Origin: Octopus sinensis
Lineage: Eukaryota
DNA: 64,000 nt
NCBI RefSeq assembly: GCF_006345805.1
Contig: NW_021831286.1
Coordinates: 124,001-188,000 of the forward strand
Reading direction: 5' to 3'
Under the pieces are notes generated by a model, which saw only the letters and a program-made list of their open reading frames with translations, searched no databases and was not told the origin of the DNA. The translations under genes were made by a program, and so were the position numbers. Below are positions 2,730-61,400 of this stretch, in pieces. The stretch's first letter is position 1, and each line of letters opens with the position of its first letter.

Positions 2730-2749
2730 AAAGTATTTTGATATTAATA

Positions 2750-3075
2750 TTTATTTATTATTTATTTATTTATTAACTCCAAGATCACCGAGAAAGATAG
2801 GTCAAAACTAATTAGGTGATCCCTGCCTCCAACAGCCCTACTATCCTTACATGATCTTCTGATGATCCAACCGTAACCCGGAAACGCCTTCTCTTCCTTC
2901 TGCAGAGGAACTCAATTGGAGTGCATTTCTTTATAACCGACCGAAATTCCTCTGCATGGGCCACCTTTTCCTTGAGTGGGTTTCCCAGTTCCTTGCAGAA
3001 ACGTAGGAAACCCTGTCCATTCTTCTGCGTCGCCTACTCAGAAGCAAGGCTGCCAACTGAGGTGTCAGTGTGGAG
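2750..3075 (-). mobile_element. Probable 3' end of a LINE with (AAAT)n tail
   Basis: GC-richer island. Minus-strand frame ends ..VGLLEAGIT*, followed by a short UTR and aataaataaataataaat at about 2750-2775. Confidence 0.35.
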
Positions 3076-15500: not shown

Positions 15501-16616
15501 AGGTCCCCCACCATGAATTTACGAGAAACTTCTCCTCTGACCCACTCCTTATCATCTCCAAAGCGTGGCCGATTAAATTCGTCGTGCCGCTCAGGCTGAT
15601 CAATTAGTTCCTCAATAGGGCGTTCAAGGAGGGATTTTAGATGCGTTTTAATTTCAGAAGCCAAAGACTTGCGGTTTTCTGAAGAGTGCACCGAAGTTCC
15701 AAGTCCAAGAGGTGCAAAACAGAAAAGGCGGATCCATGATTCTGTGTCACGTGACTGGAGTGCCCTTTCAACAAGACTGTTGAGGCACGAGGCAGCGGAA
15801 ACTCTGGCTGACTTGGGGATCTTTAAAGGGATCCTTCTGGATTTTCGAATAGAAGAGAGCAGCAGAATAATTGAATCTCCGTCTGTGATTGAAAATACAT
15901 CAGAGCGTTTTGCTCGGGGTTCAGAAAAGGTGAACATGCGTAAACAAGGTAAGCAAAGCCAATTACGAAGGCCAAGGTATACAATGAGAAGTACAATTAT
16001 CGATCAAAATCAAAATTGACTTTTTTCCTTCGTCAAAAAGTTGTCAAAATTAATCACCCATTTACTAAAAATTTGGCCCGTCATCCAAGCCCTTTTTGAA
16101 CTGTAATATGAAACAGAGAATTGATAGTCGTAATTTTTGAAACATTTAGCATCTTTGAGTTTCCAATTAAAACAGGCTTTAGTTTGTGATTCCCAGACAT
16201 ATTTGCACACAACATTACAGATACCCGATCCTTAAAATCTTTATATCGTCCAAACTGAGTCTTGCAAATACTTTTAGCTGGAATTAGTTTGTAGAAAATC
16301 CCTGTTTCATCAAAGTTATAAATTTCATCGAGAGTATAGGACTTGGATAAATTTTGAAATTCATTTAAAAATCCTTCGATGTTAACTTTTTTATCAGTTT
16401 TCATCTGCCCATGCAATTTTCTCAGACGGAATTCATGTCTTTTTTAAACTTGAACAAAAACTTTTTAAAAATGTATTATTTATCCATATTTTTTTATTTT
16501 TTATCTAAAAATTTTAAAAATTGTGGCGAATTTCCATTGAAACTAGAATTTTTTTTAAAAAAGGCGAATCTAAGAATTGGCGAATTTAAGAATGGCCAAT
16601 TTTGGGGTATTCACTG
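12579..16616 (-). mobile_element. pogo/Tigger DNA transposon interrupted by a CRE retrotransposon
   Basis: TIRs CAGTGAATAC(T/C)CC.AAATT.GCCA with TA TSD (12577-78, 16617-18). DDE_1 pieces YNFDETG, RVSVMLCANMSG, AWMT, LIDNCTSH (15975-16416) and a C-terminal KQT..YF piece (12755-13051). Confidence 0.9.
13185..15975 (-). mobile_element. CRE-clade RLE non-LTR retrotransposon, 5'-truncated, nearly intact 867-aa ORF
   Basis: RT motifs GIRPIAIGNVFRRL, LDIKNAFNS, GVQQGDPIGPLLF, WYLDDAT; C-x-C..H..SC; RLE GKRPDG..WDSTC..KVQKY..ETSG. One TAA at 13334 precedes the terminal QRISIAILRGN (true stop near 13190). Confidence 0.92.
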
Positions 16617-31098: not shown

Positions 31099-32830
31099 TT
31101 AATCAGAAATTAATCGGCCAGCAAGCCGGATGGAACAGCTGTTTCCACGCACAACGGCCAACAGGATCCTCTGGATTAGGAATGTAAATTCCCTAGGATC
31201 CTTGGAGCGTAATGAACAGAGGTGGCCAAGTTTCTTCAGATGATCAACTGTCTTTGTGCCAAAGACGCACGAAGTCTCAACAACAATTGGCCAAAACCAA
31301 AAGCCGTCCAACAAGCCCCGGTATTTTTCGGATTTTGTATATTCAGCCCTATTAGCACGGGACCCGGGCAGAGAGGCGGATTCGTTGATGGCCGACTTAG
31401 AGAAGGAATCAACACACGTGGCATCCCAAACTAGTGGTTTACCAGCGTCGAAAGCGAACAACGTCGAGCCATCAGGCCTTTTTCCATCACCACGGTCAAG
31501 ACCAATTGGCTCAAGGACAGAAAAATACCCTGCCTTTTCGAAGCATGGAGAATGATCTTGTTAAGAGCCGAATGACGAGGTATGCGACCTGCGCTTTTCT
31601 TGCAGGAAAGGGCATGGAGCCCGTATGTGTCCATCGTTGATCCACACCGGCAGGGGTGGGGATTACAAATCGGTAGTCCGAGACGAAGGCATATTCCAAA
31701 ACGGAGGGCATCAGAGTCGAGGCAGGTATCCAAATGGGTCGTGGGAAGGCAGTTAAGCCAGGAGCCAGAATACGGTTGGCGACTGGCACGGAAGCAAGCT
31801 AGTCTGTGCTGGTCCAAGAGACGCTCCAACGAGACAACGTAATATTCACAAATAATTTTGTCCCATTCACGTTGGAGAGATCGTTCTGACGGTAAGACGA
31901 AATGCTTTTCCTTCCAAAGCAAGAGTGCAGAATTGATATCAGAGTCCAAAGTTGATTCGGGTGATTTTTCAAGAATCTTATGGACAAGAAGATACAATCC
32001 TGAAGAAGATGAAAGGAAAGCGGGAAGAGAAAGGTCGAGCGCGGAGCGAAGCCCCAGACCGCCAGAGGATACAGGAAGTTTGGCCTGACACGAACCAACG
32101 TCATCAAACTTGACATTAAAAATCTTCTCAACGGAAGAACGCACCAGAGTGTCGAAAGAATCCAAGGCAATAGGAATAGAAAAACAGCGGGAACTCCTTA
32201 GGACATAATTGATTTTCGGGATCAGAAGATAATTTTTGAGAATGAAATAAGCAGGGTGGGGATCAATATCTGCAAGTTTATCACAAAGGGAAGAAAGGGC
32301 ATTCCTCTTGGAATTAAGAATACGAATGGCGGATTGGTCGTAGATCGGAGCACCCAAGATTTCGAGATCAGCAGTGGAAGTATGTCTCAGATCGGGCAAA
32401 AGGCCTCGAAACTGAGAAAAAATGTTTTGAAAACTAACACGATCGATGTTAACATTTACGATTTCAGATTTGAGAGAATTAATTTCGAGACCAATGGATG
32501 ACAAAGCTGGGATTAGAGATTCCAAGTCCTTTATCAAAATATCGGGCGGACCACCAATAGTACAATCATCCAAATACCAAATATTCAGAGGCGACAAATT
32601 CTTACGGGCAATAAAATCCACGGAAAGGGCAAATAATAACGGGCCCAAAAGATCGCCTTGCTGTACACCACAAGAAGAGGAAATAAAGGAATCACCTGCA
32701 GCCAAAAGGCTCGGGTATCCATATGAAAGAAAAACAAATGGCAGCAATGAAGGAATTCTGTCTTTACAAACCTCAAGTAGATGCTCTCTGTTGAGAGAAT
32801 TGAACGCATTTTGATACATTGTTTTCAAAA
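31099..32830 (-). mobile_element. CRE-clade retrotransposon, 5'-truncated within RT, one frameshift
   Basis: NAFNSL, GVQQGDLLGPLLF, WYLDDCTIGG, CRCG..HALSC, GKRPDG..WDATCVD..KSEKY..VETS..QRILLAVVRGN. Confidence 0.9.
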
Positions 32831-40189: not shown

Positions 40190-43025
40190 TCAATTTCTCC
40201 TTTTATTGTAAAAAATCTCTGCAATAAAAATCAATAGCCCGACAGAAATTCCGACTGCCACAATGATGATAAGCTCTAAAATGTATTTCTTATTGAATGC
40301 CTGTCATATTCTCTATTCCTACAGTTTCGAAATTGAAGGCATTTTCGCATGCATTTTCTCTAGAAATATATACTTGTTCTAGATATTGAATTGTTCCGTC
40401 TCTAATTATTTTAGTTTTAATAAACCATAGACATAATTTTGAATTTGATTGCTTAGTTGATTCGCCACAGGCAAGTTTTTCCTAACTCCAAAAGCTGCTT
40501 CTACTTCTCCAAATCCAGATCCTACAACAGAATATCCACATTTTCCTCTTGTCCAGTATTTTAGCTGTGATTCGTCGTGAATCAAAGCGCCGAGTTTTCT
40601 TAAACATTATAATGCTAGGGAAAACCCTGATTCCATGTCTTTGAGGACTGTCGTCATGTTATTGTACTTTGTTTTGGTCATATATGTAAACACGTGTATC
40701 AATGTTTTGTGGTATTTAAAGTAGTATGGAGCGAATCCAAATGAAAGGGTTGTAAATTCGAAATTCGGATGTGTATTTTTCTTAATCTTTTCTAATCAGT
40801 AACAGCTTTTTTACGATCAAATCTTCAACAGAAGATATAGTGGTCTGAGAGATGGCCTTTATGTAGAACGAGGCTAAATTAGCAGTGTATGAAGCTACGA
40901 TCAAAAATGAAAAAATAGCCCATGTAATTCCTAAAAATTTCCCTGAGAAACTTTTTGGGACATCTATAAATAGAGAACAGAATCAATACTTTTTGCAATC
41001 GGAATGTTTAACAAAACTCCAAGAGAAAACCAGATTGCACTGGAGATTTTAAGGTCGTTGTTGGTTTGATTTGGGGTTGTTTTTCCTTTTTTCATTCTAT
41101 TAGAATCTGGAATATAATATTGCGAGAAAGGAGAGATGCGATCAAATAAATAAAATGCAGTTGCTACAATAATAGGGCATACAAACAGAACTCCCCACAT
41201 AGTTAAACTAAATGATTGGAAGAACGAGCTAAATATTGTGTTTGAATTCTGAGTTTGTAAACTTCAAAGACTCACATCATACAATAAAATTCTATTTCTG
41301 CCCAACATGTACGGGAATGAAAAGTCAATATATTTCATTCTAAGCCTTGTTATGTGCATGGAAACGGCTGCAATGTCCGCTTTCCCGGTCGCAAGTTCTT
41401 TTACGAGGCCATACAGATAATTCTCGTTTCCAATCTAAAATGTCCATTTAATAGAAAAATACATAGTGAGGTCCAAATTGCTTGTCTCCGACAACGTAAA
41501 GTACAAATTCGAAATTTAAGTCAACGGCCAATTTATTCAAAAGTGCAACACAAAATCCCCTGCAACAATAGTTTGTCGTCAAATCTAATTTATTTCTAAA
41601 TATAATTTCACTTGTTTTTGGATCTTTCCAATCACATGGTAAAGCAGGCTTTTCACATACTTTGCTTTCAGGAATGAAGGTTTCAATAAAAGGGACTTGA
41701 TTTAATATTGTAACCTATTATTATAATAAGAGGAAAAAGCTTTTAGTTTATAAAATTCTTTAATAGAATTGAAAGGAAAAATGTGCACGTGAGGCCAAAT
41801 TATAGCAGGAAAAAACAAATCACTAGTTGAAGTCTAGTTTATAAACAATGAGCTAATTACATTATTTTTGTTAAAAATGCTTCCTACTTCTACAAGTCCT
41901 TCAGGTTGGGTATTAACTACTTTAAAATTATAATTTCGTTGATTCCCAAACGAGTCAAAATTGAGTAATTCGGAATGAAAACCAATTAAGGTTCTAAATA
42001 AGATTACTTGAGATTTACTCAAATTTGAATATTGTGTTGACTGTGTTTGCAGATTGGTCGCAAGAGACTTTTTCTCTGTTAAATCCGTTCGATTCAAATG
42101 ACGTCGTGATCATACGCAGGATTTCTTTAAACTCCATCTCTAAAATATTTTCATTTTTATAGCGAATTCCCAACATTCCTAAATAATAAAACATGAAAGA
42201 ATACCGACTGGTATCCCTTCAGCGTTAAGAGAATCTTCACAAAGAACCCAAATATACTGAGTATCTAGCAATTTAAGTTCGTTAGCAGAATTAAATATCT
42301 TTGCTGTGTCATTATGACTGAAATTTAAAAAAATGTCCAACTTTGAACATAGAAATATTATTCTCGAAAAACAATCTTCGATCGGTCTCAAAAAACTGGT
42401 GTAATTCTCCAGATTTGGAGGAAGTTTTATGAGTTTTTCAATAATTATCTAATTAAGGCTTTAATTCAAACATTTTTTTCAGTAGTTTCAATATTACGGA
42501 GTTGTTCCACAATGTGATGAGACTCGGGGTCGTCCGAATGCACAAAAATTATATATTTCCATTCAAAAAAAATACAAAAATCACGAAAAGCATTCGCCTG
42601 ATAAAAATAGGGAGAATCTGTTTGAATAAGTGGCAGATGCAATTTCTTATAATAAATACAAAAAATACATTTTTATTAAAATAGGTTTTTCGCGAATTCA
42701 TGGCGATGACGGGAATAGACAGAAATCCAGACAGTGTTTCCAACGAAGACTCGAGTACTTTACTTTTTTCATATTTATCAGTAATAATAAAATCAATTTT
42801 TAACATTTGTGCATTGTTGCAAAAATAGTCAATGGTCTCTAATGTCGAAGATTTGAGAAATATTTCTTTGATAATAATTTGAGTAATGTTTTTAAGTGCA
42901 CTAAAATTATAGTTTATAGCAATATTTTGAAGTTTTAGTATTTTTTGACTGTCTAAAACTACACCAATATTCAGAACAATTCCATTGGTGAAAAAAAATT
43001 GGAACAAAAAAAGATTCAGAAACAT
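40190..43025 (-). CDS. GRIN1: Ionotropic glutamate receptor, NMDA GluN1-like subunit, multi-exon
   Basis: ATD LNIGVVL..SGFLSIPVIAMNSR; S1 CCRGFCVALL..LATGKADIAAV..RMKYIDFSFPY; M1 YLFDRISPF; M2 SAIWFSLGVLLN; M3 IVASYTANLA; S2 LIHDES; M4 VGISVGLLIFIAEIFY. Confidence 0.9.
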
Positions 43026-44081
43026 ATTCAAATATTTTTTTAATAAATCATAATTATCGGCCTGTATTATAAAAGACTAATTATTTTGCGATAAAGATAC
43101 CGTTGGGAAATAACTAGTAATTAATTAGCATCCCAATAGCCAGAGGTTTGCTAAAAATATGTCTTGGATATCTTATAAATCTGGTTATTATTTTGAATCA
43201 AGGACCCTAAATAAAAAGAAGGTCCATCCCATGTCATTACACATAAAGAATTTGATTTTTATCAGTAAACGAAAGGGCTCAAAGAAAAAAAACTTTAATA
43301 TAAATTAAAGGCTGTTTAAATTTTTTCAAGCTAGAAACAAACATGTGCTGTTTCTGTATAAGCTGTTGAATTTTATGAGCTTAAAGTAGTGGTAAAATAA
43401 CTCGATCCAAATTAGTGAAACATCAATTCAATCTTTGACCTGCAACCAAGCATTGATTATATCTATCCATCTTTGACCTAAGGAGATTGCGCTCTGTCTT
43501 TATGTTAAGTAAAAGATCCCATCGAGTTCAATTAATGTCTGGAAACTCAAAAGTATGGGTGGAATCCCAATATACATTTTGATTTTTATCCAATTCAATA
43601 TTGTTGTCCATGGTAAGGTCACTGGGAAGAGTATTGTCGTAGATGTGGATAACATATGCCTATTTCTTTTGCAGATAGTACAAATAGATAAGGAGGAGAA
43701 GTATGGCCTCCTTTTATACAAGCTAGGGCTGATACATCAAAGCCGATTTCATTTCTTGTCTGATGACACGGTGCAGACTGGTCACAAAATATGACACGGG
43801 TTGCTTAAGGTTGTTAGATGTAAATAAGTTTCTACAGGCTTATATGTCGTCAACTTTTCTTAAGAGGACTCTGGAGAGTTTCGCACTTGACGTTTGATTC
43901 TTTTCCTGACTTTTAGTCACCGGAAAGCGCTGGGCTGGGCCTGCTTAGAGATTTTCAGAGAAGAGAAGAGGAAGAAGAAGACAACAATGTGGAGTGTTAC
44001 CCCTTATCCAATCAGAAGGCTCAGTACTTAGATAAATTAAATTTGAAAATATTTTTATTAAAATGTATATTTTTTAAAACT

Positions 44082-45201
44082 TTAATGGCGTTGCTTTAGC
44101 ACGATTGAGGAGCATGAAATTTGTATTTCAACATCTCCCTTTTTCTGCGAATTGTTTATGGATGTAGGAACTTCATTTCCATTGTTCGCAATTAAGCATA
44201 CTATATCTTTACCGTCATTAGGACAATAGTTTAATCCTTTGCTAATCCAGTCCAAAACACATGATTTGTGGAACTAGAACATCGTTAAGTGTAAAAATAC
44301 CCGATGATAGCACGACGATAATATTAAATTATCATCTTTTTTTAAAAAAAGCAGACAAATGTAACAAAGATGAGATCTCACAGCTGATTTGAGATTTTCT
44401 TTTCTGTTGCAGTTTTTTATAACTCTGAATATTGTTTTTAGTTCTCTGTAAAAAATAAAAATTGCTAGACTTTGAGGTTAGTGAATGATCTTGAATCTTA
44501 GGAATTTCTGAACGTTTTATGTCTGCAGAGAATTGAAAAAGATAATTTTTGATATTTTTTACACTTCCAAAACTGCATCGACACATCGGACAAGGAACTG
44601 TTTTTTGATTACTCTGATGGGCTGCCCAGATTTGGAGACATTTCATGTGTAAACTTTTTCCACATCCAGATCTTTAAATAATGCCATTTTAACGGTACTT
44701 GCAGTAAGTTGTAGGTTTATGACTTGGAAAAAAATCCTCTTGACAGACAGGACAGATATCAGCTTTTTCTATAATTTTTTGTTCAACGTGGACTTGCTCG
44801 GATTCTTTTGGTTCGCAAATTGTGATGGGAGTAGTTAAAGACGTACTTAAAATTCTTTCCAAGACCATCGAAGTCATACCAGTTTGCCAACATACTAGAT
44901 TTATTTTAAGACCGATTACATGGATCATATGTAGAAAGTTTAAATTTTCTAACAAGTATCCAATAGATGTGAATACACAAGTCTTTTTCTGTATAATTTG
45001 AACACGAACAAATATGTTTTTGTCCTAACAAAACCTTGAAGAAAGTAAAAACAAACAGACTTTATATGAAATTTCATCATTAACCGATTCTTTAACTCCG
45101 AATCCCAAAGGGCCATAGTGGCGAATAATTAAAAAGTTTTTGTTCTGAACCAAAAAAAGCTGCCTTTGTTGCGAATCACTTGGTTTATTTTTCCAAGACA
45201 T
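44082..45201 (-). CDS. ZSWIM2: SWIM-RING-RING E3 ligase, ZSWIM2-like
   Basis: SWIM HICSCSN..LCIHIYWIL; RING1 ICPVCQED..CG..LHMKC..CPMC; RING2 CYIC..SCYHRFHKSC..WI..CPNDG. Micro-introns of 25-27 nt where measured. Confidence 0.85.
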
Positions 45202-45906: not shown

Positions 45907-47575
45907 TTAGGTAGAATATTTTATGCTCAAAAAAGTTACGGCGATCTGACACGTAAGCGTAAAAAAATATGCAATAAAACATATTCTGTCTACTACCAAA
46001 GCCAGTTGTTTCCATTCGCATTTTTCATGATACAAGTTATTTTGTTTTGTTGCATTTTTAATAATTTCTTTTATGAGTGTAGAAATTTCTTGTATCTCGC
46101 TACATATTTCTTGATTTATATCATTAGCTAAATCGTTGGACTTTGAAGCAAAGTAATCATTAATTTTTTTAATTTTTTCACGTTTCTAAAATAATTAAAA
46201 ATAAAATTTTTACACGTTCCAGTGCTTCTTTGAATCTTGATTTATACTTTATAGATTCATTAGGATATTTTTTAGTTTCTTTAACCAAACTATATTGAAT
46301 TTTCTGAAAATCCAGGTTCATAAAGAGAAGCTTTTTTCCAATGAAATCAATTAATATCTATTGTTTTTAAACACGGCAGACTATTTTTAAGTAACGAGGA
46401 ATTTTTGTCTCTCTTTCACTCATATAAATATTTGAAATGATTGCGGCCAGAAAAGAAGAAAAGGCAATTGTGAACATGCTGATAGCGAAATATTCAACTT
46501 TCATGTCAAATTTACACAACTACCGATGATTGGAGTAGTCGATGTTTTGGGGATAGACTCTTCGAGAATGAGCAATAGTGCAGAAAATGCCACAAAAATA
46601 TTTATACCTATTCACGATAAGAACAAAGGGGTACCAAATATAACTTTTGCAGATGACCAGGGAGGCAACCAAAAGGTAATCATTGTTAACATGGAAAGAA
46701 GAATACATGGAAAGAGTAATTTATAGTTATAGAACTCTGACCTTCGCTGTAGTATCATTGAATATGTTAAATCAACAAATGTAGAGTTGCCACAACACGT
46801 ATAACTAATATATTAAAGCGACTGGAACCTCATGAAATGTCTATAACCAATGTTGGAAAGTATTTTCCATTGATTGTTATCTATATAACTATCCAAGTGA
46901 ATTTTATTTTCTTGATTTTTGAAATGCAAAATAATATATTTTGAATCGTACGTCCATGAGCCAAATTTCATTGAACAGTTTTGAATGTCAAATGGGAAAT
47001 ATGTCATATGCATCAAGCAATAGCTCCGATAAGTGGACGACGGATACCACTTGACTGTTCCATTATAGCTAACTGTAGCTAACGCCGGTCTTCTTTCATC
47101 CAGACGGTCGTCAGCGCTTTAATATGTAAAATAAACAAGAACATGTTGTAAAGCCGCAAATCAAGAATCCAAATATTTTCCGAGGGAATCCTCAGTGTTG
47201 TGATATTGTTGAATAATTGTGGATCCCATGTAAGAGCATAATCTGTCCATGTCTTTATATAATAAGTTCACTTATCTCACCATTTCAGTAATCATGACTG
47301 TTGTGAGGATTTGCGCATGTTCGTCGAGATCCAGAATTTGTGTTAGAAATAGATTTAGAAAAACGTGCATGACTTCTTTGGAATGCTTGACCGGCCTCCC
47401 AAGAATCCCAATTTCTTTGTAATTTCCCATTAATTTTGCTATTAACATATTTTCAGCATTTGAATTAGTCGAACTAAAGCCTGAATAATTTCACATTAAA
47501 CAAGTACTTAAAATAACTAGAAATAAATTCTTCCAATCCATACATAAAAATTGATTCGCAAATATAATTTCATTT
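45907..47575 (-). CDS. Nicotinic acetylcholine receptor alpha-type subunit, anion-selective-clade-like; first exon uncertain
   Basis: Cys-loop CLMHMTYFPFDIQNC, loop B FGSWTYD, loop C YTCC, M1 LFPCILLS..FWLPP, M2 SSAKVIFGINIFVAF, M4 EWKQLALVVDRICF. Introns 24-28 nt give an uninterrupted frame. Confidence 0.93.
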
Positions 47576-48019
47576 ATAAATAATTGGATAATTGCCTGTT
47601 AATTAACACGAGTTAAGTTCGCTCTTATCTTGTTACTGTCTGAAAGAAAACACGATTGCGCAAAAAAATTAGCTACAGTCACAAACACGACTTCTTCTTT
47701 TTAGTTGGACTTCTAATTATGCATGTCATAAAATTGTGATAAACCCTTTTAAAATACATACTACGACTGAATCAGACATTTCGGCATACAGTATTGAGGG
47801 CTATTCAATATGGCATAATAAAATGTTTTTCAACTTATGCTTTGTCATTTGTTCTAAATAACTCGTGAAGCCTCTTAAAATATAGTTAAAAATCCCACAT
47901 AAACTAAAAATATCGCATTTAAAATTGAGAATGAGTGAGACAGGCTGGCATAATAATATTTGTTAGTTTTTGTTAAAATAACAAATATTACATTATTTTT
48001 GTAGTATTTTATCACATCC

Positions 48020-48590
48020 GCTTGGGTCTTAATGTCTACTCGGGGACCAATTCCGATGTGGTAGTAAAGTCGATACCAAAGGATTACAACCCCCTATCAT
48101 GCAGAAGGAGTGCTGGCCGTGCACCTAGACACTTCGCCATCAACGAGATCATTTCGGCTGCGTTACAAACTGCTGGTTTCCCTACCGATCTGGAACCTGT
48201 TGAGTTTGGCCGCGGAGAAGGGAAACGCCCTGATTGAGTCGCCGCTTTTCCGTGGATTAATGGGAAATGCATCGCATGGGACTCTACGTGCACGGACATT
48301 TTCTCGAAGATAAATTTAGTCGACTCGGCAATCAGTCTATGATCAGCCGCTAAAAAGGCTGAAGAACTTAAAATCTCGAAATACTTTAACCTGACGGACA
48401 ACGTGATTTTTTCCCCAATCTCCGTTGAGCCATGACCAACAAATCTCTGGAACTCGTTTGGAGAATCTGGCAACTGATCTCCAGAAGACGTCGAGAGCCT
48501 CGGGAGAAGCAATAACTGTTCTAAGGAATCTCCATTGCGATCCTGAGGGCCAACGTCTTTTCGATCATTAGTAGTTTTAAACATAATTAG
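48020..48590 (+). mobile_element. CRE-clade 3' fragment, same family as 13185-15975
   Basis: Clear nucleotide similarity to 13200-13750 (shared gatgtggtagtaaagtcgataccaaagga); several stops. Confidence 0.9.
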
Positions 48591-49981: not shown

Positions 49982-51318
49982 ATGAAAATCCGCTCTGAAT
50001 TACTTTTAATATGTTATATATTCTTTCTGGTTATGATGCTTACAACTTATATTTAAGACTAGAGAAAGTCAATTTCACTATATTTTTGAAATAACTGGAT
50101 TCAAATCAAAACTTGTGGAAACCGAGAAGGGCATAAATACTCCATATACAATCTCTGTGAATTTGCGATTTCAAGACGGGAAAGACGCTGGAAGATTTTC
50201 ATCTTCTCTTCATTTGTCAGACCCGGGAGATGTTATGTCAAAAGAATTTACAGTAAGTGACACGGTATTTAAAATTTTTTTAAATAAATTAGAAATACAT
50301 CCAGCAAAATATAAGATTGTATAAAGAATCTCGGAAAGACGACAGTATTCAGTAATTTAAAATCATTTCCTAGTTTTTGAAACATCATTCTCCCATTTAT
50401 TAATTTTTGGTGAGTCTTGGAAAGTTTTTGACAACAAATATTTTATGTACAAGTTTCGCATTTTGTGCCAGCAAAAATACCTGGGAAGACATTGTAATAA
50501 ATTAAAAAATGAAGAAAAAAATCCATCATGTCCCACCGGATGGAAAGGACCCACATGCAATGAAGGTTGGTTGAGTAATTATAATTTATTTGAAGTACAT
50601 ATTAATTAGTGCACTTTTGTATATTATTTTTTTAAGATTTGAAAGTTAAATCTGAGAGTTTGCTTATTTTAGACTTAATTAATTTCCAACTCATTAGCGA
50701 TTATTTTAAAAAATAATGAGATCCACTTGTACTGCATTAGTAGTAGACAATGTCGATTTCTATAATTTTAAAAATACTATTAAAATTAATATATATTTCA
50801 AATAGCTGTCTGCAACCGAGGATGTATCCACGGAAAATGTATTGTCCCGGAAAGATGTGACTGTTATTTACATTTTGAAGGAGACAAATGTGATATATTT
50901 ATTCATCAAAACTGTATTGTATTTTGAAATTAAATTTTACATAGCAAATGATTATTGTGAAAAATATAAACCTTGTAAAAATGGAATATGTGCTAACAAC
51001 GAAATCTATAATTTCACATGCAAATGTTTTTCTGGATATTCTGGGAAAAAATGTCATTTAAAAATTGATTGTGGGGGCGAATCTTGCCCCAATTATATAC
51101 AAATTAATTTTCCTTCAATTGTGATTATAATAACTGCTCTTATTATCCTGGTCGTCTTAGTTGTGATTGTTATAATTATGAAATGTGGAGTTTTCAATTA
51201 TTTAAAAGAGCGTCCTCCGCCAAAGTACTTTCAAGTAACTAGAAACGTCGAAATATCTGAGCCAAAAACATGTATATATAATGTCATATATTTAGATATA
51301 TGTACAAATGGAATTTGA
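49982..51318 (+). CDS. Delta-like single-pass EGF protein (Notch-ligand-like)
   Basis: Signal-like N-terminus, DSL-like CQQKYLGRHC..CPTGWKGPTC, EGF CNRGCIHGKCIVPERCDC, EGF YCEKYKPCKNG..FTCKCFSGYSGKKC (cf. DLL EGF3), transmembrane helix, short tail. 5' exons not fully resolved. Confidence 0.75.
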
Positions 51319-51779: not shown

Positions 51780-52620
51780 TTTACGCTTTGCGGCCACATA
51801 TAGTTTGAGGACCCGGCGGTGTCTATTGTTACTCTCAAGTAGCGTAGGTTCTTTGTAGGTTCCCATAATTTTTGAAAGTCGGTTTTTTGTCATTAATCAT
51901 CGAAATCTAATAAATCAGATTTCTAGTTCCTCCAAGTACGGTTCTAGTCTGCTTCGAGAAAACCTCGTTCTGTGTCGGAATCCCAATATTGAGAAATCCC
52001 TAACCAAGATATCGTCCGCGTAAATAATTAGTCTGCTCGTAGGAAAATGCGGTTTCGGGACGTCGGCCAGAAATATATTGAAGAGCAAGGAGCTGAGAAC
52101 TGATCCCCGAGGAACCTTTCTTTCTCAGATTTACGGGGTTCGATAGGAAATTTTCACAAAGAAATTCTCTAGCCATCTGACGGTTTTCAGCTTAGCATTC
52201 AATTCTGCCACTTTCTCTAACAGCCCAAAGTGCCAGACACTCCCAAAGACCTCGCAAACATCCAAGCAAACCACCGTTAAACAAGTTTGGCCCGAGACAG
52301 TTCTTTCTCAAAAAGCGAAAAACAGTGACCGGTTGATCGGCCAGGTCTAAATCCCCACTGTTGTTTCGCAAGTATATTATTTTGCTTAACTTAAGCCGAT
52401 AAACGATTGAAAATGATTGTTTCCATTATCTTTGAGGTTGTGCAGATAAGCCTAATTGTTTTATAGCTTCCTGACCGCGTATTCGGTTTCCGGGTTTTGA
52501 GATCATTCGGACGATTTCCCGTTTCCAGTCAGTTGGGACATGACCATTGTCCTAACTGGCATTGAATAGTTTTCCCAAGATACGAAGCACAAATTTGGGT
52601 GTATTCTTGAACTTTTACAT
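51780..52620 (-). mobile_element. Degenerate Jockey/I-like LINE RT
   Basis: QWGFRPGRST, CLDV..FGSVWH, PRGSVLSSLLFNIFLAD, YADDI. Confidence 0.8.
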
Positions 52621-55336: not shown

Positions 55337-55550
55337 TATTATCGCTGTTAATAACTTATTTATAAAAAGAAATATCTTCCGTTGTTGAATATGTCACATA
55401 AGCCACTCGATACCTATGGCCAGTCTGTTGCATTAACCTTGAACCAAGATTACTGATTAAGTTTTTGTAATTGATATTTTTTTATTTGTTAATATAATGA
55501 ATATAAAATAATTTTATCTAATAAATAATCAGAATATCTTCTTCGTGTTG

Positions 55551-55998
55551 ATGGCCGATCGTGTAACTCAGCTGCAGGAATGCATAAACATGGTTGTTAT
55601 TTATAATCACTGTAACAAGCTGGGTGAACTATTTACGAATAGTGTAGGGATAATACAACAAACATCCAGTCCAGTTCCTTTAGACGGTTCTATCTCTCCA
55701 AAAGCATCCGAATCTGAAGATTACCCTGAACTTTATAGTAAACAGATCACACGACTTACCCACGACATAAATAATTTAATTGAATCGCTTCCACAAGAAA
55801 TAGAAATTCTTCCGCAGGTTTACCACATTAAAATGATTGTAGAATGAGAAAATCATTCAACTTGAGAAAACTAATAAAGATTTGGCTGACAAACTTCTGA
55901 TCGAATGTTCAAAGGCCGAGAACTTGCTGAACCATGTCCTTGACATTACCACGTTTATTGAAAACATTCAACTCGATAATGTCCCATATAAACTATAA
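55551..55998 (+). CDS. MED21: Mediator subunit 21, two micro-introns
   Basis: MADRVTQLQECIN..ELFTNSVGIIQ..INNLIESLP. Introns 55593-55619 (27 nt) and 55818-55842 (25 nt). Confidence 0.93.
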
Positions 55999-56178: not shown

Positions 56179-58270
56179 CAGGGGTGGCCAACCTTTTTCA
56201 CCGGCGAGCTACTTTTCATTTTGCGATTTTTTGGAGATCGACTTATATATTTTAATATCAAAAATTTTATTTTACAATTAAAAATTAATGCGATTTTTGG
56301 CATTGTAATTCACTTGCGATTATTTCAAATTCTGGCTCGTATAAGCTTATTGCTATTCTCATGCAATCCCCAAGATGGTCATCCGTTAAACGTGTCCTGT
56401 ATTGAGATTTTATCATTTTCATACTTGAAAATGATGTTTCGGATAAATATGTGCTTCCAAAGCATGAAAGAATTCGTTGATACGAATCAATCAAAATTGG
56501 ATATTTTTCCTGAGACATAAATTTCCACATGTTGGCATTTAAATGTAATTTTAAAGTGATGTCATTTTTTAGATTTATAATTTCTATTTGACTTTTTCTT
56601 CGATCAACGTCAAAAATCTTGCTAAATTCTTCTGAAATATTTTCGATGTCTACATCCATGAACGGAGAAACAAAGAAACTGCATAATATAGTAATTTTCT
56701 TGAAATCGCTAAATCTGTTATTAAACTCGTTCATTATTTTTTCTAGTACCATAGCAAATTCATTGACATAATGATTTTTATTCACAAGTTGTTTTGTGAA
56801 TTCATCTTCAATGTTAGGAAAATGGGTAAAATTTTCTTTTCTGATTTGAGATATCCATAATTCCAACTTTATTATGAAAGCATTTATTGAACTGATCATA
56901 TCGATAATATATCTATTCTTTCCCTGTAATTCTAAATTGAGTTCATTCAGTTTGCTGGTAATATCGGTTAAAAATGCCAAGTTTATTAGCCAATCAGGAT
57001 TTTCAAGAAAATGCCAATTCTTGTTGTTTTCTTTAGAAAATTCTTTAATGTATGATAATAATTCTCTGAAACGACTGAGAATTAATCCCTTGCTTAACCA
57101 TCTTATGTCACAATGTAAAGGTAGATCGCCATAGATTGCATCGACTTGTTCTAGAAAAAGTCGAAATAATCTTCTTTGTAGGGGCTTGGCTCGGATGGAA
57201 TTAATAATTTTAACTGTTGTCTCCATAACATAGTTGAAATTTAACATTTTCCCACATAATGCATGTTGGTGAATGATGCAATGATATGATAAAAATTTCG
57301 GAAAATGTTCATCTTTCCGACAAAATGCAATAAATCCATTTTGATTCCCAATCATTGCAGGAGCTCCATCTGTTGTTATGGATACAAGTTTCTTCATTAA
57401 CGGTAATAATTCGAATGATAACAAAAACGTTTGAAAGAATTATAAATATTTTCACCAGTTGTTCTTTCTTTCATAGGTATAATAGCAAATAACTCTTCCT
57501 TGACAGTTAGATCATGGAAGATTAAACGGGAAAATACACATAGTTGGGCGATATCAATAGCATCGTTTGATTCGTCAAACTGTAAAGAAAAACACGAACA
57601 TGCGTAAAGATCCTTTTTTAACTGCGAAAGAAGATTTTCAGAAATGCTTTCAGCCCTTCTGACAATTGACTGTTTTGAGAGCTGAAGCTCTTTGATGCAA
57701 TTTGAAATTTCCTGTTTATTTTTCATACCATCAAATAGTGAATCGGCAGCTTCCAAAAAACAAGATTTTAAAATTTCCCCATCAGTGAAAGGTTTTTTGT
57801 GTTTTACGAGGAGACGAGTCACTCGCAATGATGCAATTGTTGCAGATCTGGACGAATTAATAAACTTTTTCAAAATTGTATGTTGTGAAAAAAAAGATTT
57901 TTTTAATTGTTCAACTTTCTCTTCCCGTAATAAGGAATTTAAAGGAAAGTGTTTGTTGAACTCGGGATGTAAAGAATTAAAATGCCGACAAAGATTTCCC
58001 CTTTTTGGTAATGAAATGATTTTATTGCATAGCATACATGTGCATTTTTCCATGTGCATCGTAAAAATATAGTCTTTTTCCCATTTGGCATTAAATTTAT
58101 ATGATTTGGACTTTTTGTTACACCTCATAACAAGACACGTGAAAAATACTTACTTTAATATTGATAAATATTTTTTTATAATAATTTAAATACAAAAAAA
58201 ATAATTAACAATTTATATATCGAGCGATCGACCACGAAACATGCCGCGATCGACCGGTTGACCACCCCTG
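56179..58270 (-). mobile_element. Near-intact hAT transposon (SPIN/GTF2IRD2/EPM2AIP1-like), single frameshift
   Basis: TIR CAGGGGTGG(C/T)CAACC, perfect TSD GTCTAATG. ORFs 57397-58128 and 56285-57424 carry BED-like CMLC..LCRH, SLQFDES, ITTDGAP, YHCIIHQ, IRWLS, GSTYLSE. Confidence 0.95.
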
Positions 58271-58473: not shown

Positions 58474-61400
58474 CAGTTAAACCCCTGCCTGCTCCAATAG
58501 AAATCAGCCCTGAATACAGGGGAGGCCCCAGATATCGAGGGTATGTTAATTTATACCCTTTTTTAACTTTTTATTTAATTTTTTAAAATAAAATAGCACT
58601 TAAAAGTCGAAAATTTATTTTATTTATCAATTAAAAAAAGTAATCGCTAATCTTCCCTCCAATATTACATTTTTTTAATTTCTTGGAGACGTTCATTTTA
58701 AAAACATAATATTCATTAAGTGCTTCGGGACATACATTGAATAATGAATTTTCTAAAATATTTATTATATTCATCGTGTCTTTGATGTTATGATTCACAA
58801 TTTCAGCATCCCACCCATCATATAATTGAGGGTCATTTTCAGTTCATCAAATTCTATTTGTATTACATCTGAAATATGAGTCTCCAAAAGTTAAGATTGA
58901 ATTTTTTGATTAATTTCGAAATCATTAATTCTTAATTCATTTATTTTATTAGTTATTGTGTCTTTTGTTACTCAATTCCATGTTTCTCTTATAAATATGA
59001 CAATTTTAGCATATTTATCTTCAATAATGTCTCATAATAAGTCTCATAAATATCGCCAATACAAATTGCTTCATAGAATACATTTGAATAAGATAATTTA
59101 AAAGAATTAATGATCCACCATATCAAGGGGTTGAAAAATGGTAGTTGTATTCTTCTGAAGTTTGAGGAAAGTAAGATTTGAATAATTTGGAAATCTATGA
59201 CACGTAGCATTATCAAAAATAATTAAAATTTTTCGATTTTGTGAAAATATTTCATCATTAATTTTCTGTAACCAATTGTTGAAAATATTAATAGTCATCC
59301 ATGCATTTTTTGACGCATCTTATATAATATATATGTATAATTTAAAATCATTACTTCATAATCCTCAGTCTTATATTCTTAAGGTATCTGGGAGATTTAT
59401 ACTTTTCAATAATCAAAGGTTTTGACTTCTCACCTTTAATAAAACAGCATAAAAGAATTGTTATTTTTTCTTTACGGATTTTTCTACCAAAGCAATTTTC
59501 ATATTTAGTGACAAATGATTTATTTGGATTCTTTTTAATGAAAAAGCAGGTTTCGTCACAATTAAAATGTCTTCCATGTTTAACTTATTCATAAAGTCAT
59601 CATACTCTTCGTAAAATTTTTTAATTAAATTTTTGTCGAAGGAATTCTTTTCACCAGAAATTCCTCTAAAAAATAGTTCATGAGGTTTTTTAAAGCGGGC
59701 TAGCCATCCATTAGAGCTTTTAAAGCTGCTAAAATTTATACGAGTCACGATATTTCTGGCAATTTTTTTAATTAAACATCCGGGAACTGTAATCCCATCT
59801 TGCCTCAGATTCCTGAAAAGATCAAAAACCAGACGATCAAGTTTTGATGATAGATCTGATTCATAATTTTTGTATAGAACTGCGTCAGTAATAGTATTTG
59901 AATAAAATTCTTGTTTAGTTTCCATTTTTATTATAGATACTGTTCCCTTCCCAACTTTAAACATCTTTAATATTTCCCTTTCGAATATGGAGTTTTCCAA
60001 CGCCTCAAAATTTTTCCTTAAAGCACAAGAAAGTACAGTAAAACCTCTCGAATCCGCCGATTTTGGGACCGACCAAAAAATCGGCGGATTCGAGAAATCG
60101 GCGGATTCGAGAGGCAATTTAATAATATTTTATAGTTGAAATATGAACTTACAATATAGATTAAGTATTTCTTTTATATACAAATGACTGAATACATAAA
60201 TTATTTATATTCAAAAAATCAGAAATTTTATTTTTTTAATTGATTTTCTTAACATTCCCCAATTCGCATAATATTTTCATGATCATCTATATCTGCATTT
60301 ACCTGAGAAGCATAAGTTTTAATAATCTCTAGAGCTCTGAAGGCTTCTGAGAGATCAACTTTTTTTCATTTGATTCCTCTTCAATAATTGTTTCCTAAGT
60401 ATAATTATAAATAAAATCACTAACTGATTGAACTTTTTTTGACTGTAATGTACCAGCTTGTTCAGATTTGTTTAAAAATTCGACAATAATTTGATGAGAT
60501 GGACATTGATCTATTACAAGTAGAATTTTTCTTTTTTTCTTTGCAAGTTCACAATCAAAATCACTGAGCCACTTGTTAAAAATTTCACGGTTCATCCATG
60601 CCTTATTGGAATGGGTGTAGGTAACATATTTTCCAATGTTGAAATTTTTAAAACACCTTGGACTTTTGAATCTTCCTATCATCACAGGCCTTCTTTTATC
60701 GGAACCAGAAAATTTGCGCATAAGAGTAACGAAAATCGATCCTTCGACAACTTTATTCCAGGCCGTGATTTGGTGCACACACTTTTGGAAGGAATCGCCT
60801 TGTAAAAAACACCAGTTTCATCTGCATTATAAACATTGTCCAATCCATATTGTTCAATTTTTAAACTCATTGTTTCATTAAAATCAGTAATAGATTTTTC
60901 ATCATGATTTACTGATCCACTGTCTCCGTGAAATTTCTTAACTTGATACCATTTCGTAATTTAAACTTTTCTAGCCACCCACGACTTGCTTTAAATTCTG
61001 GAAAATTTTTTCCAAATTTAAGAGCTTTTGCAATTAACATCGAATCTGATAGAATTGCTCCGCTAGATTCCACTAAGTTAATCCATGTTATCATCGCTAC
61101 ATCAATTTCATTAAATTTGAGTTTTGGAATTCTCGTTATGTTTAATTTTTGATGTCAGTCCTATTCAAAAGGTCCGATTTTGATTTAAGGTCGTTTATAG
61201 TTCTCGGAGAATTTTCTTTTTTAACCGTGAAGAAAAAATCCTGGAAATTTGAGGTGCAGAAACGAATGGGTTGTCAGAAATATAACGTAGTATAGAAATT
61301 TTTTCGTTGATAGAAAGTCTAACACAGCGACGCATCACAAAATACAATTTAACGTGTAATGAGAATTTTAAAATGTTAATTAATTTAACTTACAATTAGA

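What the first reader, a model, noticed from the sequence alone, without database searches (positions are those of the whole stretch)
45907..47575. nAChR alpha subunit with the signature of the spiralian acetylcholine-gated chloride channels
The M1-M2 linker and M2 read WLPPWSSAKVIFGINIFVAF (SSAK at 46645-46656). Ala sits at -1' instead of the Glu of cation channels (GEK). GxNIFVAF and ADDRLDERR resemble the anion-selective clade (Lymnaea LnAChR-B, schistosome SmACC), but Ser replaces the usual -2' Pro. Loop C vicinal cysteines (YTCC) are retained, so it should bind ligand. If the source is a dicyemid, this is an intact inhibitory-type receptor in an animal described as lacking neurons, and a marker of spiralian affinity.
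Basis: partly seen in the sequence, partly recalled or inferred. Interest (0 to 1): 0.7.

Follow-up and report, generated by a model that had tools for sequence, protein, structure and literature searches.

The report
Dicyemid acetylcholine receptor, chloride-channel lineage
An intact gene in what is almost certainly a dicyemid (a tiny, nerveless parasite of octopuses) encodes an acetylcholine-receptor subunit from the spiralian lineage whose tested members are chloride channels, so acetylcholine may act as an inhibitory signal here, but this copy has an unusual pore filter and nobody has measured what it conducts.

Summary
SSAK lies at 46645-46656 on the minus strand, inside an intact 474-aa Cys-loop receptor gene (9 exons, 47541..45907). 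Its eight GT-AG introns are 24-28 nt long, the dicyemid hallmark. The protein joins the spiralian "Pro-Ala-Lys" clade (Lymnaea type K, Biomphalaria type B, trematode ACCs, Intoshia) in 200/200 NJ bootstraps, and again in 200/200 with all pore columns removed. It shares clade markers outside the pore, and four intron positions and phases with the Intoshia gene. It is a divergent, long-branch member: Ala(-1') and Lys(0') are kept, but near-invariant Pro(-2') is Ser, Glu(-4') is Trp, the loop D Trp is Ile and the loop A Pro is Leu. The principal ACh-binding face, including the vicinal Cys pair, is intact. Best reading: an alpha-type subunit of an ACh-gated, probably anion-preferring channel that likely needs a partner subunit. 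Anion selectivity and ligand are inferred, not shown. Dicyemid nAChR-like genes were already counted in 2019, but as excitatory. Spiralian placement of dicyemids is already accepted. Moderate interest.

The parts
45907..47541 (-). Complete gene for a 474-aa Cys-loop (nAChR-family) subunit. It has 9 exons: 47541-47508, 47480-47281, 47252-47143, 47116-46829, 46804-46635, 46607-46524, 46497-46382, 46357-46214 and 46185-45907 (stop included).
   Evidence: Spliced model; Pfam LBD and TM domains; co-linear with the homologues' tblastn matches. Four introns share position and phase with the Intoshia homologue.
47481..47507 (-). Intron 1 (27 nt, GT-AG). The other introns are 47253-47280 (28), 47117-47142 (26), 46805-46828 (24), 46608-46634 (27), 46498-46523 (26), 46358-46381 (24) and 46186-46213 (28).
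   Evidence: This size class matches the published Dicyema median of 27 bp (PMC6543705).
47389..47421 (-). YKEIGILGRPV: a clade-specific 3-residue insertion with G36 and G39. Cationic subunits have a gap or Val at these positions.
   Evidence: Alignment and diagnostic-column analysis.
47290..47292 (-). Ile75 at the loop D position of the complementary-face Trp (alpha7 W55).
   Evidence: Trp in 91/93 clade members and 42/50 cationic subunits. The muscle-type alpha1 in the set has Arg here.
47145..47171 (-). Loop A, WILDLRLYN. Trp, Asp and Tyr (Y93 equivalent) are kept. The near-universal Pro is Leu108 (47165-47163).
   Evidence: Pro in 92/93 PAK and 49/50 GEK sequences.
47089..47115 (-). ADDRLDERR, which matches the clade marker AD.RL.E.R (clade consensus ADERLEEKR; cationic consensus ADGRFEGS).
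   Evidence: R119, E122 and R124 are diagnostic columns.
46975..47019 (-). Cys-loop, C148-x13-C162, containing FPFD.
46954..46956 (-). Loop B Trp169 (W149 equivalent) within KFGSWTYD.
46777..46803 (-). Loop C, YTCCGNSTF. Tyr212 (Y190 equivalent) and the vicinal Cys214-Cys215 are kept. Phe220 stands at the Y198 position, and there is a one-residue insertion.
   Evidence: 23/93 clade members also have Phe at this position.
46645..46662 (-). M1-M2 linker and selectivity filter, P-W-S-S-A-K (-5' to 0'): Trp260 (-4'), Ser262 (-2'), Ala263 (-1') and Lys264 (0').
   Evidence: The clade reads P-E-S-P-A-K (E 91/93, P 92/93, A 93/93, K 92/93). Cationic subunits read x-D-x-G-E-K.
46558..46647 (-). M2 pore helix, KVIFG|INIFVAFSALLLILEE, interrupted by intron 5. 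It carries the clade-type G.NIFVAF, with deviations Phe3', Ser12' and Ala13'.
45934..46005 (-). M4 helix, preceded by the EWKxxAxVVDR motif.

Best explanation
This is an intact, single-copy (within this window) gene of a dicyemid mesozoan. It encodes an alpha-type subunit of the spiralian nAChR sub-lineage whose characterised members are acetylcholine-gated chloride channels.

Shown here:
- a complete 9-exon gene with dicyemid-size introns;
- the Cys-loop, four TM segments and the principal-face ACh-binding residues (Y93, W149, Y190, the Cys-Cys pair, and an aromatic residue at 198);
- clade membership that does not depend on the pore;
- a selectivity filter lacking the -1' Glu of cation channels, keeping the 0' Lys, and also lacking the -4' acidic residue.

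Inferred mechanism:
- ACh (or choline/nicotinic agonists) binds at the loop A/B/C face of this subunit and opens a pentameric pore.
- The cytoplasmic mouth carries net positive charge (+1 per subunit from -5' to 0', against 0 in typical clade members and -1 in cationic nAChRs), so the pore should favour anions.
- Ser in place of the -2' Pro probably lowers, but does not reverse, anion selectivity, and may change conductance or desensitisation.
- The complementary-face loop D Trp is missing, as in muscle alpha1, so the subunit most likely works in a heteromer with another of the roughly 8 dicyemid Cys-loop subunits.
- In an animal without neurons or muscle, the receptor would mediate paracrine, non-neuronal cholinergic signalling, plausibly control of ciliated cells.

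My confidence in clade membership is about 0.95. My confidence in an ACh-gated, anion-preferring channel is about 0.6.
For: - Gene model. Four of 8 introns coincide in position and phase with introns of the Intoshia clade member.
- Similarity: the top ~55 full-length hits are all PAK-type spiralian proteins (270-348 bits). The best GEK-type invertebrate hit scores 251 bits and the best solved cationic structures 232 bits.
- NJ bootstraps for the split (window + PAK | GEK): 200/200 with all columns, 200/200 without the pore, 156-164/200 on the ECD only, 192/200 on M1+M3+M4.
- ECD-only HMMs: 249.9 versus 214.8 bits.
- Diagnostic clade columns: 11/16 are in the PAK state (7/9 outside the pore) and 0/16 in the GEK majority state. 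The protein retains 66/72 positions that are >=95% conserved in the clade, within the range of other divergent members.
- Named relatives: Lymnaea type K, Biomphalaria type B, Cryptocotyle ACC-1 and the ShAR2beta cluster.
- Function of relatives: SmACC-1 forms a homomeric cholinergic anion channel, and the Lymnaea subunits are anion-selective (PMC4055736).
- Selectivity determinants: in GlyR, A-1'E alone converts the channel to cation selectivity, while deleting P-2' leaves it anion-selective but weaker (PCl/PNa 3.8 versus 27.9), and the 19' ring has little effect on monovalent selectivity (PMC2233820).
- Anion-selective GABA-A beta subunits naturally read S-A-A-R, with Ala at -2'. One clade member reads SAAK.
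- Source: introns of 24-28 nt match the Dicyema median of 27 bp.
Against: - No functional, expression or orthologue data could be obtained. The source genome is not in the searchable collections, so neither purifying selection nor transcription could be tested.
- The literature treats the Pro-Ala pair as the defining motif of these channels, and Pro is absent here.
- In alpha7 nAChR work (my own knowledge, not checked here), neutralising -1' Glu alone did not make the channel anion-selective.
- Six positions that are >=95% conserved in the clade are changed (W75I, P108L, E260W, P262S, F276S, G296V). The branch is long: mean distance to clade members is 1.14, against 0.75 among them. Both could mean altered or relaxed function.
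- There is an extra Glu at 19'.
- The trees are NJ only. No ML or site-heterogeneous model was available.
Confidence: 0.6

Rival explanations
1. It is a clade member by descent, but the filter has drifted (Pro-2' to Ser, Glu-4' to Trp, Phe12' to Ser, Ala13'). The channel would be poorly selective or even cation-permeable, so ACh would not be inhibitory here.
For: Pro-2' is 92/93 conserved in the clade, and PMC4055736 treats it as part of the defining motif. Removing it in GlyR cut PCl/PNa about 7-fold. There is an additional Glu at 19'.
Against: The main cation determinant, Glu-1', is absent, Lys0' is kept and the -4' acid is lost, so the inner mouth is more positive than in proven anion channels. 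GlyR without P-2' is still anion-selective. GABA-A beta subunits and clade member P0176 have Ala at -2'.
Confidence: 0.17
2. It is a decaying or functionally released gene: a relic of the lost nervous system under relaxed constraint, not making a working ACh-gated channel, or gated by a different ligand.
For: Near-universal residues are lost: loop A Pro (141 of 143 sequences), loop D Trp and the PLIG Gly. The branch is long. The surroundings are rich in transposons, with an RT fragment about 450 bp upstream of the ATG. No expression evidence is available.
Against: All 9 exons are open and all 8 splice sites are canonical. The protein keeps 66/72 clade-invariant positions, as many as or more than several flatworm members. 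The Cys-loop, W149, Y93, Y190 and the Cys-Cys pair are all intact. Dicyemid proteins are generally fast-evolving (PMC6543705).
Confidence: 0.15
3. It is not a dicyemid gene at all, but contamination from the cephalopod host or another spiralian, or an orthonectid gene.
For: The source record could not be identified.
Against: The best cephalopod and mollusc hits are only 36-37% identical. All eight introns are 24-28 nt, whereas the Intoshia homologue has introns of 37-1583 nt and the published orthonectid median is 57 bp. Neighbouring genes in the window (iGluR, RING) are also tiled by closely abutting short ORF fragments, in the same 31% GC background.
Confidence: 0.03

Closest known systems
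Lymnaea stagnalis anion-selective nAChR subunits (LnAChR type B, and the PAK-type subunit K = ABA60389.1; Biomphalaria 'type B' orthologue)
   Same: Same clade in trees with and without the pore. Shared FWLPP..AK, G.NIFVAF, AD.RL.E.R, the G..GRPV insertion, an alpha-type loop C with vicinal Cys, and the same M1-M2 linker length as cationic nAChRs.
   Different: Only 33-34% identical. It has Ser instead of Pro at -2', Trp instead of Glu at -4', Ile instead of the loop D Trp, Leu instead of the loop A Pro, and a much shorter intracellular loop. It comes from an animal without neurons. The primary paper (van Nierop 2005) was not held in the library, so the functional claim for these subunits rests on its citation in PMC4055736.
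Schistosoma mansoni SmACC-1 / SmACC-2 and other trematode ACCs (e.g. Cryptocotyle lingua ACC-1, the ShAR2beta cluster)
   Same: Same PAK clade and the same M2 sequence family. SmACC-1 is an alpha-like subunit shown to form a homomeric, nicotine/ACh-activated halide-permeable channel (PMC4055736).
   Different: The flatworm relatives recovered here (P0064, P0070) lack the vicinal Cys pair and carry large loop insertions. The window protein keeps the Cys pair but lacks the Pro of the Pro-Ala motif.
Intoshia linei 'acetylcholine receptor subunit beta' OAF65326.1 (orthonectid PAK-type subunit)
   Same: Fourth-best hit and second-nearest neighbour. Four introns share position and phase. It also comes from a highly reduced 'mesozoan' parasite.
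   Different: 35% identity. Intoshia keeps the canonical D-S-P-A-K and the loop D Trp, and its introns are 37-1583 nt against 24-28 nt here. No specific sister relationship was resolved.
Cationic alpha-type nAChRs (vertebrate alpha4, alpha6, alpha1 and alpha7; insect alpha6/alpha7-like; molluscan alpha10-like GEK subunits)
   Same: Same fold and domain order, the same principal-face aromatic residues and Cys-Cys pair, and a gap-free M1-M2 alignment.
   Different: They have Gly-Glu-Lys at -2' to 0', an acidic -4', and a T/S-rich M2 (G.T.LLSLTVF). They always fall across the tree split from the window protein.
GABA-A receptor beta subunits (anion-selective pLGICs with a S-A-A-R filter)
   Same: They show that an anion-selective pentameric channel can have a small non-Pro residue at -2', with Ala at -1' and a basic 0'.
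   Different: A different subfamily, a different ligand and no close relationship. This is a functional analogy only.

Membership tests
Cys-loop pentameric ligand-gated ion channels, nAChR branch | N-terminal ligand-binding domain followed by a 4-TM channel domain | tested here: met
   PF02931 at 2e-55 (residues 23-232) and PF02932 at 9.4e-28 (241-461). The best solved relatives are all nAChR subunits.
Cys-loop pentameric ligand-gated ion channels, nAChR branch | Cys-loop: two Cys separated by 13 residues, with FPFD | tested here: met
   C148-LMHMTYFPFDIQN-C162.
alpha-type nAChR subunit | Vicinal Cys-Cys in loop C, with principal-face aromatics (Y93, W149, Y190, Y198 equivalents) | tested here: met
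   Y113, W169, Y212, C214-C215 and F220 (Phe at this position is shared with 23/93 clade members).
homomer-competent nAChR subunit (alpha7 / SmACC-1 / LnAChR-B type) | Complementary-face loop D Trp (W55 equivalent) | tested here: not met
   Ile75 where 91/93 clade members and 42/50 cationic subunits have Trp. This suggests a principal-face-only, heteromeric role.
Spiralian PAK-type (anion-selective) nAChR clade, phylogenetic membership | Groups with clade members to the exclusion of cationic nAChRs | tested here: met
   NJ bootstraps: 200/200 with all columns, 200/200 without the pore, 156-164/200 on the ECD, 192/200 on M1+M3+M4. ECD-only HMMs favour the clade by +35 bits.
Spiralian PAK-type (anion-selective) nAChR clade, phylogenetic membership | Clade-specific characters outside the pore (G..GRPV 3-residue insertion, AD.RL.E.R, FWLPP, M3/M4 states) | tested here: met
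   7/9 non-pore diagnostic columns are in the clade state, and none is in the cationic majority state. See also the alignment.
Spiralian PAK-type (anion-selective) nAChR clade, phylogenetic membership | Shared gene structure with a clade member | tested here: met
   Introns 2, 3, 5 and 6 match Intoshia introns in position and phase.
Acetylcholine-gated chloride channel (ACC), functional class as defined in PMC4055736 | Ala replacing the -1' Glu of cation channels | tested here: met
   Ala263. This position is A in 93/93 clade members and E in 50/50 cationic subunits.
Acetylcholine-gated chloride channel (ACC), functional class as defined in PMC4055736 | Pro at -2' (the Pro of the 'Pro-Ala motif') | tested here: not met
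   Ser262; the clade has Pro in 92/93 and Ala in 1/93. I therefore file it as a filter variant of the clade, not as a canonical ACC.
Acetylcholine-gated chloride channel (ACC), functional class as defined in PMC4055736 | Measured anion selectivity (Cl-dependent reversal potential or halide flux) | not testable with these tools
   Needs electrophysiology or a halide-flux assay. Only charge bookkeeping was possible: net +1 per subunit from -5' to 0'.
Acetylcholine-gated chloride channel (ACC), functional class as defined in PMC4055736 | Activation by ACh or nicotinic agonists | not testable with these tools
   The principal face is intact, but the loop D Trp and loop A Pro are changed. Needs expression.
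Dicyemida (source organism) | Metazoan gene with spliceosomal introns of about 24-30 nt | tested here: met
   8/8 introns are 24-28 nt. Published figures are a Dicyema median of 27 bp and an orthonectid median of 57 bp (PMC6543705). The Intoshia homologue's introns are 37-1583 nt.
Dicyemida (source organism) | Sequence match to a dicyemid assembly | tested here: inconclusive
   No exact product is on record for two window ORFs, and no self hit or near-identical hit appeared in the protein searches.

The most novel reading that the evidence does not exclude
A nerveless, muscle-less animal keeps a working acetylcholine-gated anion channel built on a non-canonical selectivity filter (Trp-4', Ser-2', Ala-1', Lys0'). 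It would use the channel for non-neuronal, inhibitory cholinergic signalling, for example to arrest or steer ciliated cells in swimming infusoriform larvae. That would overturn the published sketch in which dicyemid nAChRs depolarise cells, and it would show that the Pro of the 'Pro-Ala' motif is dispensable for anion selectivity in the nicotinic branch. The GluN1-like iGluR gene 3 kb away would belong to the same retained 'pre- or post-nervous' signalling toolkit.
Probability: 0.3. Interest if true: 0.65.

Novelty: new variant of a known kind. Interest (0 to 1): 0.45.

Why it matters
Dicyemids are described as having no nervous system, yet they retain neurotransmitter receptors. The one published model of their cell-cell signalling (Zverkov et al. 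2019, PMC6543705) counts 8 "nAChR-like" genes and draws them as excitatory and Ca2+-raising. That paper never mentions chloride. If at least one of these genes belongs to the lineage whose tested members are ACh-gated chloride channels, the sign of cholinergic signalling in these animals becomes an open question that can be tested.

The protein is also a natural experiment on the selectivity filter. It keeps Ala(-1')/Lys(0') but replaces the near-invariant Pro(-2') and Glu(-4'), so its ion selectivity would show what the Pro contributes in the nicotinic branch.

As a phylogenetic marker it is confirmatory only. In my sampling the clade is restricted to Spiralia (molluscs, annelids, brachiopods, nemerteans, flatworms, orthonectids, and a rotifer fragment), but spiralian placement of dicyemids is already accepted.

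Tried and rejected
I ran it with exon 4 alone (95 aa, ECD). It discriminated only weakly: PAK-type proteins led the full-span hits, with GEK-type hits interleaved.
- An ECD-only word-indexed search gave only 46 candidates, mostly fragments. It was useful only for a rotifer fragment.
- Exact-product look-ups for an RT ORF and an nAChR exon ORF found nothing, so the source record and its orthologues could not be retrieved. No dN/dS or expression test was possible.
- Rfam found nothing in the window.
I replaced it with stop-to-stop ORF fragments.
- van Nierop et al. 2005 is not held in the library.
- The pore segment has no close solved relative (best 20.9 bits), so no structure of this clade exists to model on.
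- Rejected: the upstream ATG at 47573, which hits an in-frame TAG after 18 codons.
- Rejected: an alternative 23-nt intron 6 that would restore PIIG but add a residue. The 26-nt version matches the Intoshia intron in codon and phase.
- Rejected: host or mollusc contamination and an orthonectid origin, on identity and intron sizes.
- Rejected: pore-driven convergence as the reason for the grouping, because the grouping holds with all pore columns removed.
- Not attempted: structure prediction.
Full report
**1. What is in the sequence**

Region 45.9-47.6 kb carries a minus-strand gene broken by very short introns. Joining the reading frames through GT-AG introns gives a single solution with 9 exons: 47541-47508, 47480-47281, 47252-47143, 47116-46829, 46804-46635, 46607-46524, 46497-46382, 46357-46214 and 46185-45907. 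The 8 introns are 27, 28, 26, 24, 27, 26, 24 and 28 nt long, and the protein is 474 aa.

Pfam finds the neurotransmitter-gated channel ligand-binding domain (2e-55) and the transmembrane domain (9.4e-28). The closest solved structures are all nicotinic receptor subunits: alpha4, alpha6, alpha1 and alpha7 at 216-232 bits.

S-S-A-K is encoded at 46656-46645, ADDRLDERR at 47115-47089 and YTCC at 46803-46792. The only correction is the start codon. The ATG at 47573 runs into a stop after 18 codons. The ATG at 47541 gives a short hydrophobic signal peptide and splices in frame. tblastn finds no second Cys-loop gene in the window.

**2. Source organism**

The window could not be matched to any public record, and no self hit appeared in the protein searches. 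The indirect evidence is strong.
- This is a metazoan receptor gene in 31% GC DNA, and all eight introns are 24-28 nt.
- Zverkov et al. 2019 report a median intron of 27 bp in Dicyema sp., with two thirds under 30 bp. The orthonectid Intoshia has a median of 57 bp, with most introns over 30 bp (PMC6543705).
- The Intoshia homologue of this gene has introns of 37-1583 nt.
- The best cephalopod or mollusc proteins are only about 36% identical, which excludes host contamination.

I take the source to be a dicyemid, with high but not absolute confidence.

**3. Which kind of nicotinic receptor**

A full-length search of the 5.8-billion-protein collection returned, as its top ~55 hits (270-348 bits), only spiralian proteins. 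They come from molluscs, annelids, a brachiopod, a nemertean, flatworms and the orthonectid Intoshia. The best invertebrate cationic-type hit scored 251 bits.

When I extracted the pore region, these hits turned out to share a near-invariant FWLPPESPAKMxLGMNIFVAFF. Cationic hits read ..DSGEK...G[IV]T[VI]LLSLTVF. The window protein reads FWLPPWSSAKVIFGINIFVAFS.

Named members include Lymnaea nAChR type K, the Biomphalaria 'type B' orthologue, Cryptocotyle 'acetylcholine-gated chloride channel-1' and the schistosome ShAR2beta cluster. MacDonald et al. 2014 define this group as nicotinic chloride channels. They show that SmACC-1 forms a homomeric channel that is activated by nicotine and ACh, is permeable to halide, and gives no Ca2+ signal (PMC4055736).

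The word-indexed search could favour proteins that share pore words, and pore similarity could be convergent, so I tested the grouping without the pore.
- First set: 41 PAK-type and 17 GEK-type non-redundant sequences. The split (window + PAK | GEK) had NJ bootstrap 200/200 with all conserved columns, 200/200 with M1-end to M2 removed, 193/200 on ECD+M1 and 156/200 on the ECD alone.
- Second set: the cationic sample was enlarged by a profile search to 28 non-redundant GEK sequences, against 48 PAK. The figures were 200/200, 200/200, 164/200 (ECD) and 192/200 (M1+M3+M4).
- Identity to PAK members exceeds identity to GEK members in every region.
- ECD-only profile HMMs score 249.9 bits (PAK) against 214.8 bits (GEK).
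- Of 16 columns that discriminate the two groups, the window protein has the PAK state at 11 (7 of the 9 outside the pore) and the GEK majority state at none. These columns include the 3-residue insertion Y..xG..GRPV and R119/E122/R124 of AD.RL.E.R.
- Introns 2, 3, 5 and 6 coincide in codon and phase with introns of the Intoshia clade member. This supports both the gene model and common descent, and it settles an ambiguity at intron 6 in favour of the 26-nt version.

Whether the protein is sister to the rest of the clade or nested within it is unresolved, because it sits on a long branch. Its mean distance to clade members is 1.14, against 0.75 among them. The exhaustive search with exon 4 alone was only weakly informative.

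**4. How it departs from its clade**

The protein keeps 66 of the 72 positions that are >=95% conserved in the clade. That is similar to or better than the most divergent flatworm members, so it does not look like a free-running pseudogene. The six losses are concentrated at functional sites:

| Position | Change | Conservation |
|---|---|---|
| -2' | Pro to Ser262 | Pro 92/93 in clade |
| -4' | Glu to Trp260 | Glu 91/93 in clade |
| 12' | Phe to Ser276 | Phe 91/93 in clade |
| Loop D complementary-face Trp | Ile75 | Trp 91/93 in clade |
| Loop A Pro | Leu108 | Pro in 141 of 143 sequences, both groups |
| Gly of PLIG | Val296 | Gly 90/93 in clade |

Positions that are kept:
- Ala(-1') and Lys(0'), and G4'-x-N6'-I-F-V-A-F;
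- the Cys-loop;
- loop A Trp, Asp and Tyr;
- loop B Trp and Tyr;
- loop C Tyr and the vicinal Cys pair;
- an aromatic residue (Phe, as in 23/93 clade members) at the Y198 position.

**5. Mechanism: shown and inferred**

Shown:
- The gene is intact, of alpha type and of the ACC lineage.
- The intermediate-ring Glu that makes nicotinic channels cation-selective is absent.
- The M1-M2 linker has the same length as in cationic subunits.
- The charge from -5' to 0' is +1 per subunit, against 0 in typical clade members and -1 in cationic subunits.

Inferred:
- The channel prefers anions. In GlyR the -1' residue is the principal determinant: A-1'E alone inverts selectivity. Deleting Pro-2' weakens anion selectivity (PCl/PNa from 27.9 to 3.8) but does not invert it, and the outer 19' ring hardly affects monovalent selectivity (PMC2233820).
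- The -2' Pro is not strictly required. Anion-selective GABA-A beta subunits read S-A-A-R. One clade member reads SAAK, and a rotifer fragment reads SPSK. The -2' and -1' pair therefore tolerates small residues.
- The subunit probably supplies only principal faces in a heteromer, because the loop D Trp is missing. The muscle-type alpha1 in my set has Arg at this position, and it is established knowledge that alpha1 contributes only principal faces.

Not shown: the agonist, the ion selectivity, the partner subunits, expression, and the cell type.

A role in non-neuronal cholinergic control of ciliated cells is speculation. It is prompted by the animal's anatomy and by reports of transmitter immunoreactivity in infusoriform larvae (PMC6854800).

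**6. Comparison with what is known, and novelty**

Zverkov et al. [quoted passage not shown] Their scheme has these receptors raising Ca2+ directly or by depolarisation, and the paper does not contain the word chloride. The large survey of lophotrochozoan nAChR expansions does not treat dicyemids or the anionic clade.

Assigning a dicyemid subunit to the chloride-channel lineage therefore appears to be new. It is an increment to known facts, and the spiralian-affinity point only confirms accepted phylogenomics.

The Pro of the motif that the literature uses to define ACCs is not met. I therefore file the protein as a filter variant of the clade: a member by descent, with function unproven.

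**7. Surroundings**

About 3 kb downstream on the same strand lies an ionotropic glutamate receptor gene. It has Lig_chan and Glu-binding domains and the SYTANLASF motif, and its closest solved relatives are GluN1 NMDA subunits. A RING-H2 gene sits between the two receptor genes. EGF-domain and MED21-like genes lie on the other side.

The window is rich in mobile elements. It holds several reverse-transcriptase ORFs, one of which is 867 aa in a 48.6% GC island. An RT tail fragment lies about 450 bp upstream of the receptor's ATG. There are also a hAT transposase and a Tc5/pogo-like ORF.

**8. Verdict**

- Interest is moderate.

Noticed in passing
window 40600-43100, minus strand: An ionotropic glutamate receptor gene lies about 3 kb downstream of the nAChR-like gene on the same strand. 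It is tiled by short abutting ORF fragments. Pfam gives Lig_chan at 2.4e-13 and Lig_chan-Glu_bd at 2.7e-8, and the SYTANLASF M3 motif is at 40785-40982. The closest solved relatives are GluN1 NMDA subunits (131 bits, against 110 for GluA3). This is a second transmitter-gated channel gene in a nerveless animal.
   Followed up: partly
window 44085-45024, minus strand: RING-H2 zinc-finger gene fragments (zf-ANAPC11 / zf-RING_2, weak hits) sit between the iGluR and nAChR-like genes.
   Followed up: partly
window 50361-51315 (+) and 55512-55844 (+): An EGF-domain protein with a C-terminal hydrophobic segment, and a MED21-like Mediator subunit (Med21 at 2e-8). Both scores fall just below Pfam's cut-offs, because only single exon fragments were scanned.
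   Followed up: partly
window 13334-15937, minus strand: An uninterrupted 867-aa reverse-transcriptase ORF (RVT_1 at 4e-17) sits in a 48.6% GC island, against a background of about 31% GC. More AT-rich or truncated relatives lie at 31431-32828 and 47977-48234. The GC contrast suggests a young or recently acquired element. Its origin was not examined.
   Followed up: partly
window 47977-48590: A fragment of the C-terminal part of the same retroelement family (PLSCRRSAGRAPRHFAINE...) lies about 450 bp upstream of the receptor's start codon. It may therefore lie within or next to the promoter region.
   Followed up: no
window 946-2292 (-), 51918-52425 (-), 56285-58128 (-), 59461-60117 (-): Further mobile-element ORFs: another RT (RVT_1 at 2e-28), RT fragments, a hAT-family transposase (Dimer_Tnp_hAT) and a Tc5/pogo-type HTH ORF. 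The window is repeat-rich for what is reported to be a compact genome.
   Followed up: partly
P0331 (Didymodactylos carnosus, bdelloid rotifer): This ECD-M1 fragment has the clade markers ADTRLEEKR and FWLPPESPSK, that is Ser at -1'. The PAK-type clade therefore seems to reach Gnathifera, with natural variation at -1'.
   Followed up: partly
P0176 (unnamed Logan transcript-like contig): A full-length clade member reads PPESAAKMQLGINIFVAF, with Ala at -2'. It is the only other non-Pro at -2' among the 93 sampled clade members.
   Followed up: no
L001 (Intoshia linei LWCA01001345.1) 1501-5670: The orthonectid clade member has 6 introns of 37-1583 nt. Four are shared in position and phase with the window gene. 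Each lineage also has private introns: Intoshia after codon 178, and the window gene before loop C and twice in the cytoplasmic loop.
   Followed up: yes
P0003 (Dimorphilus gyrociliatus DgyrCDS7085): The annotated protein contains the M2 segment twice in tandem (…GMNIFVAFFF…GMNIFVAFFL…). This is probably a pair of mutually exclusive alternative M2 exons merged by the annotation.
   Followed up: no
P0064 / P0070 (schistosome ShAR2beta cluster, Cryptocotyle ACC-1): These flatworm clade members lack the vicinal Cys pair and carry about 20-residue insertions in loops F and C. Within the clade, the dicyemid protein is more 'alpha-like' than several flatworm ACCs.
   Followed up: no
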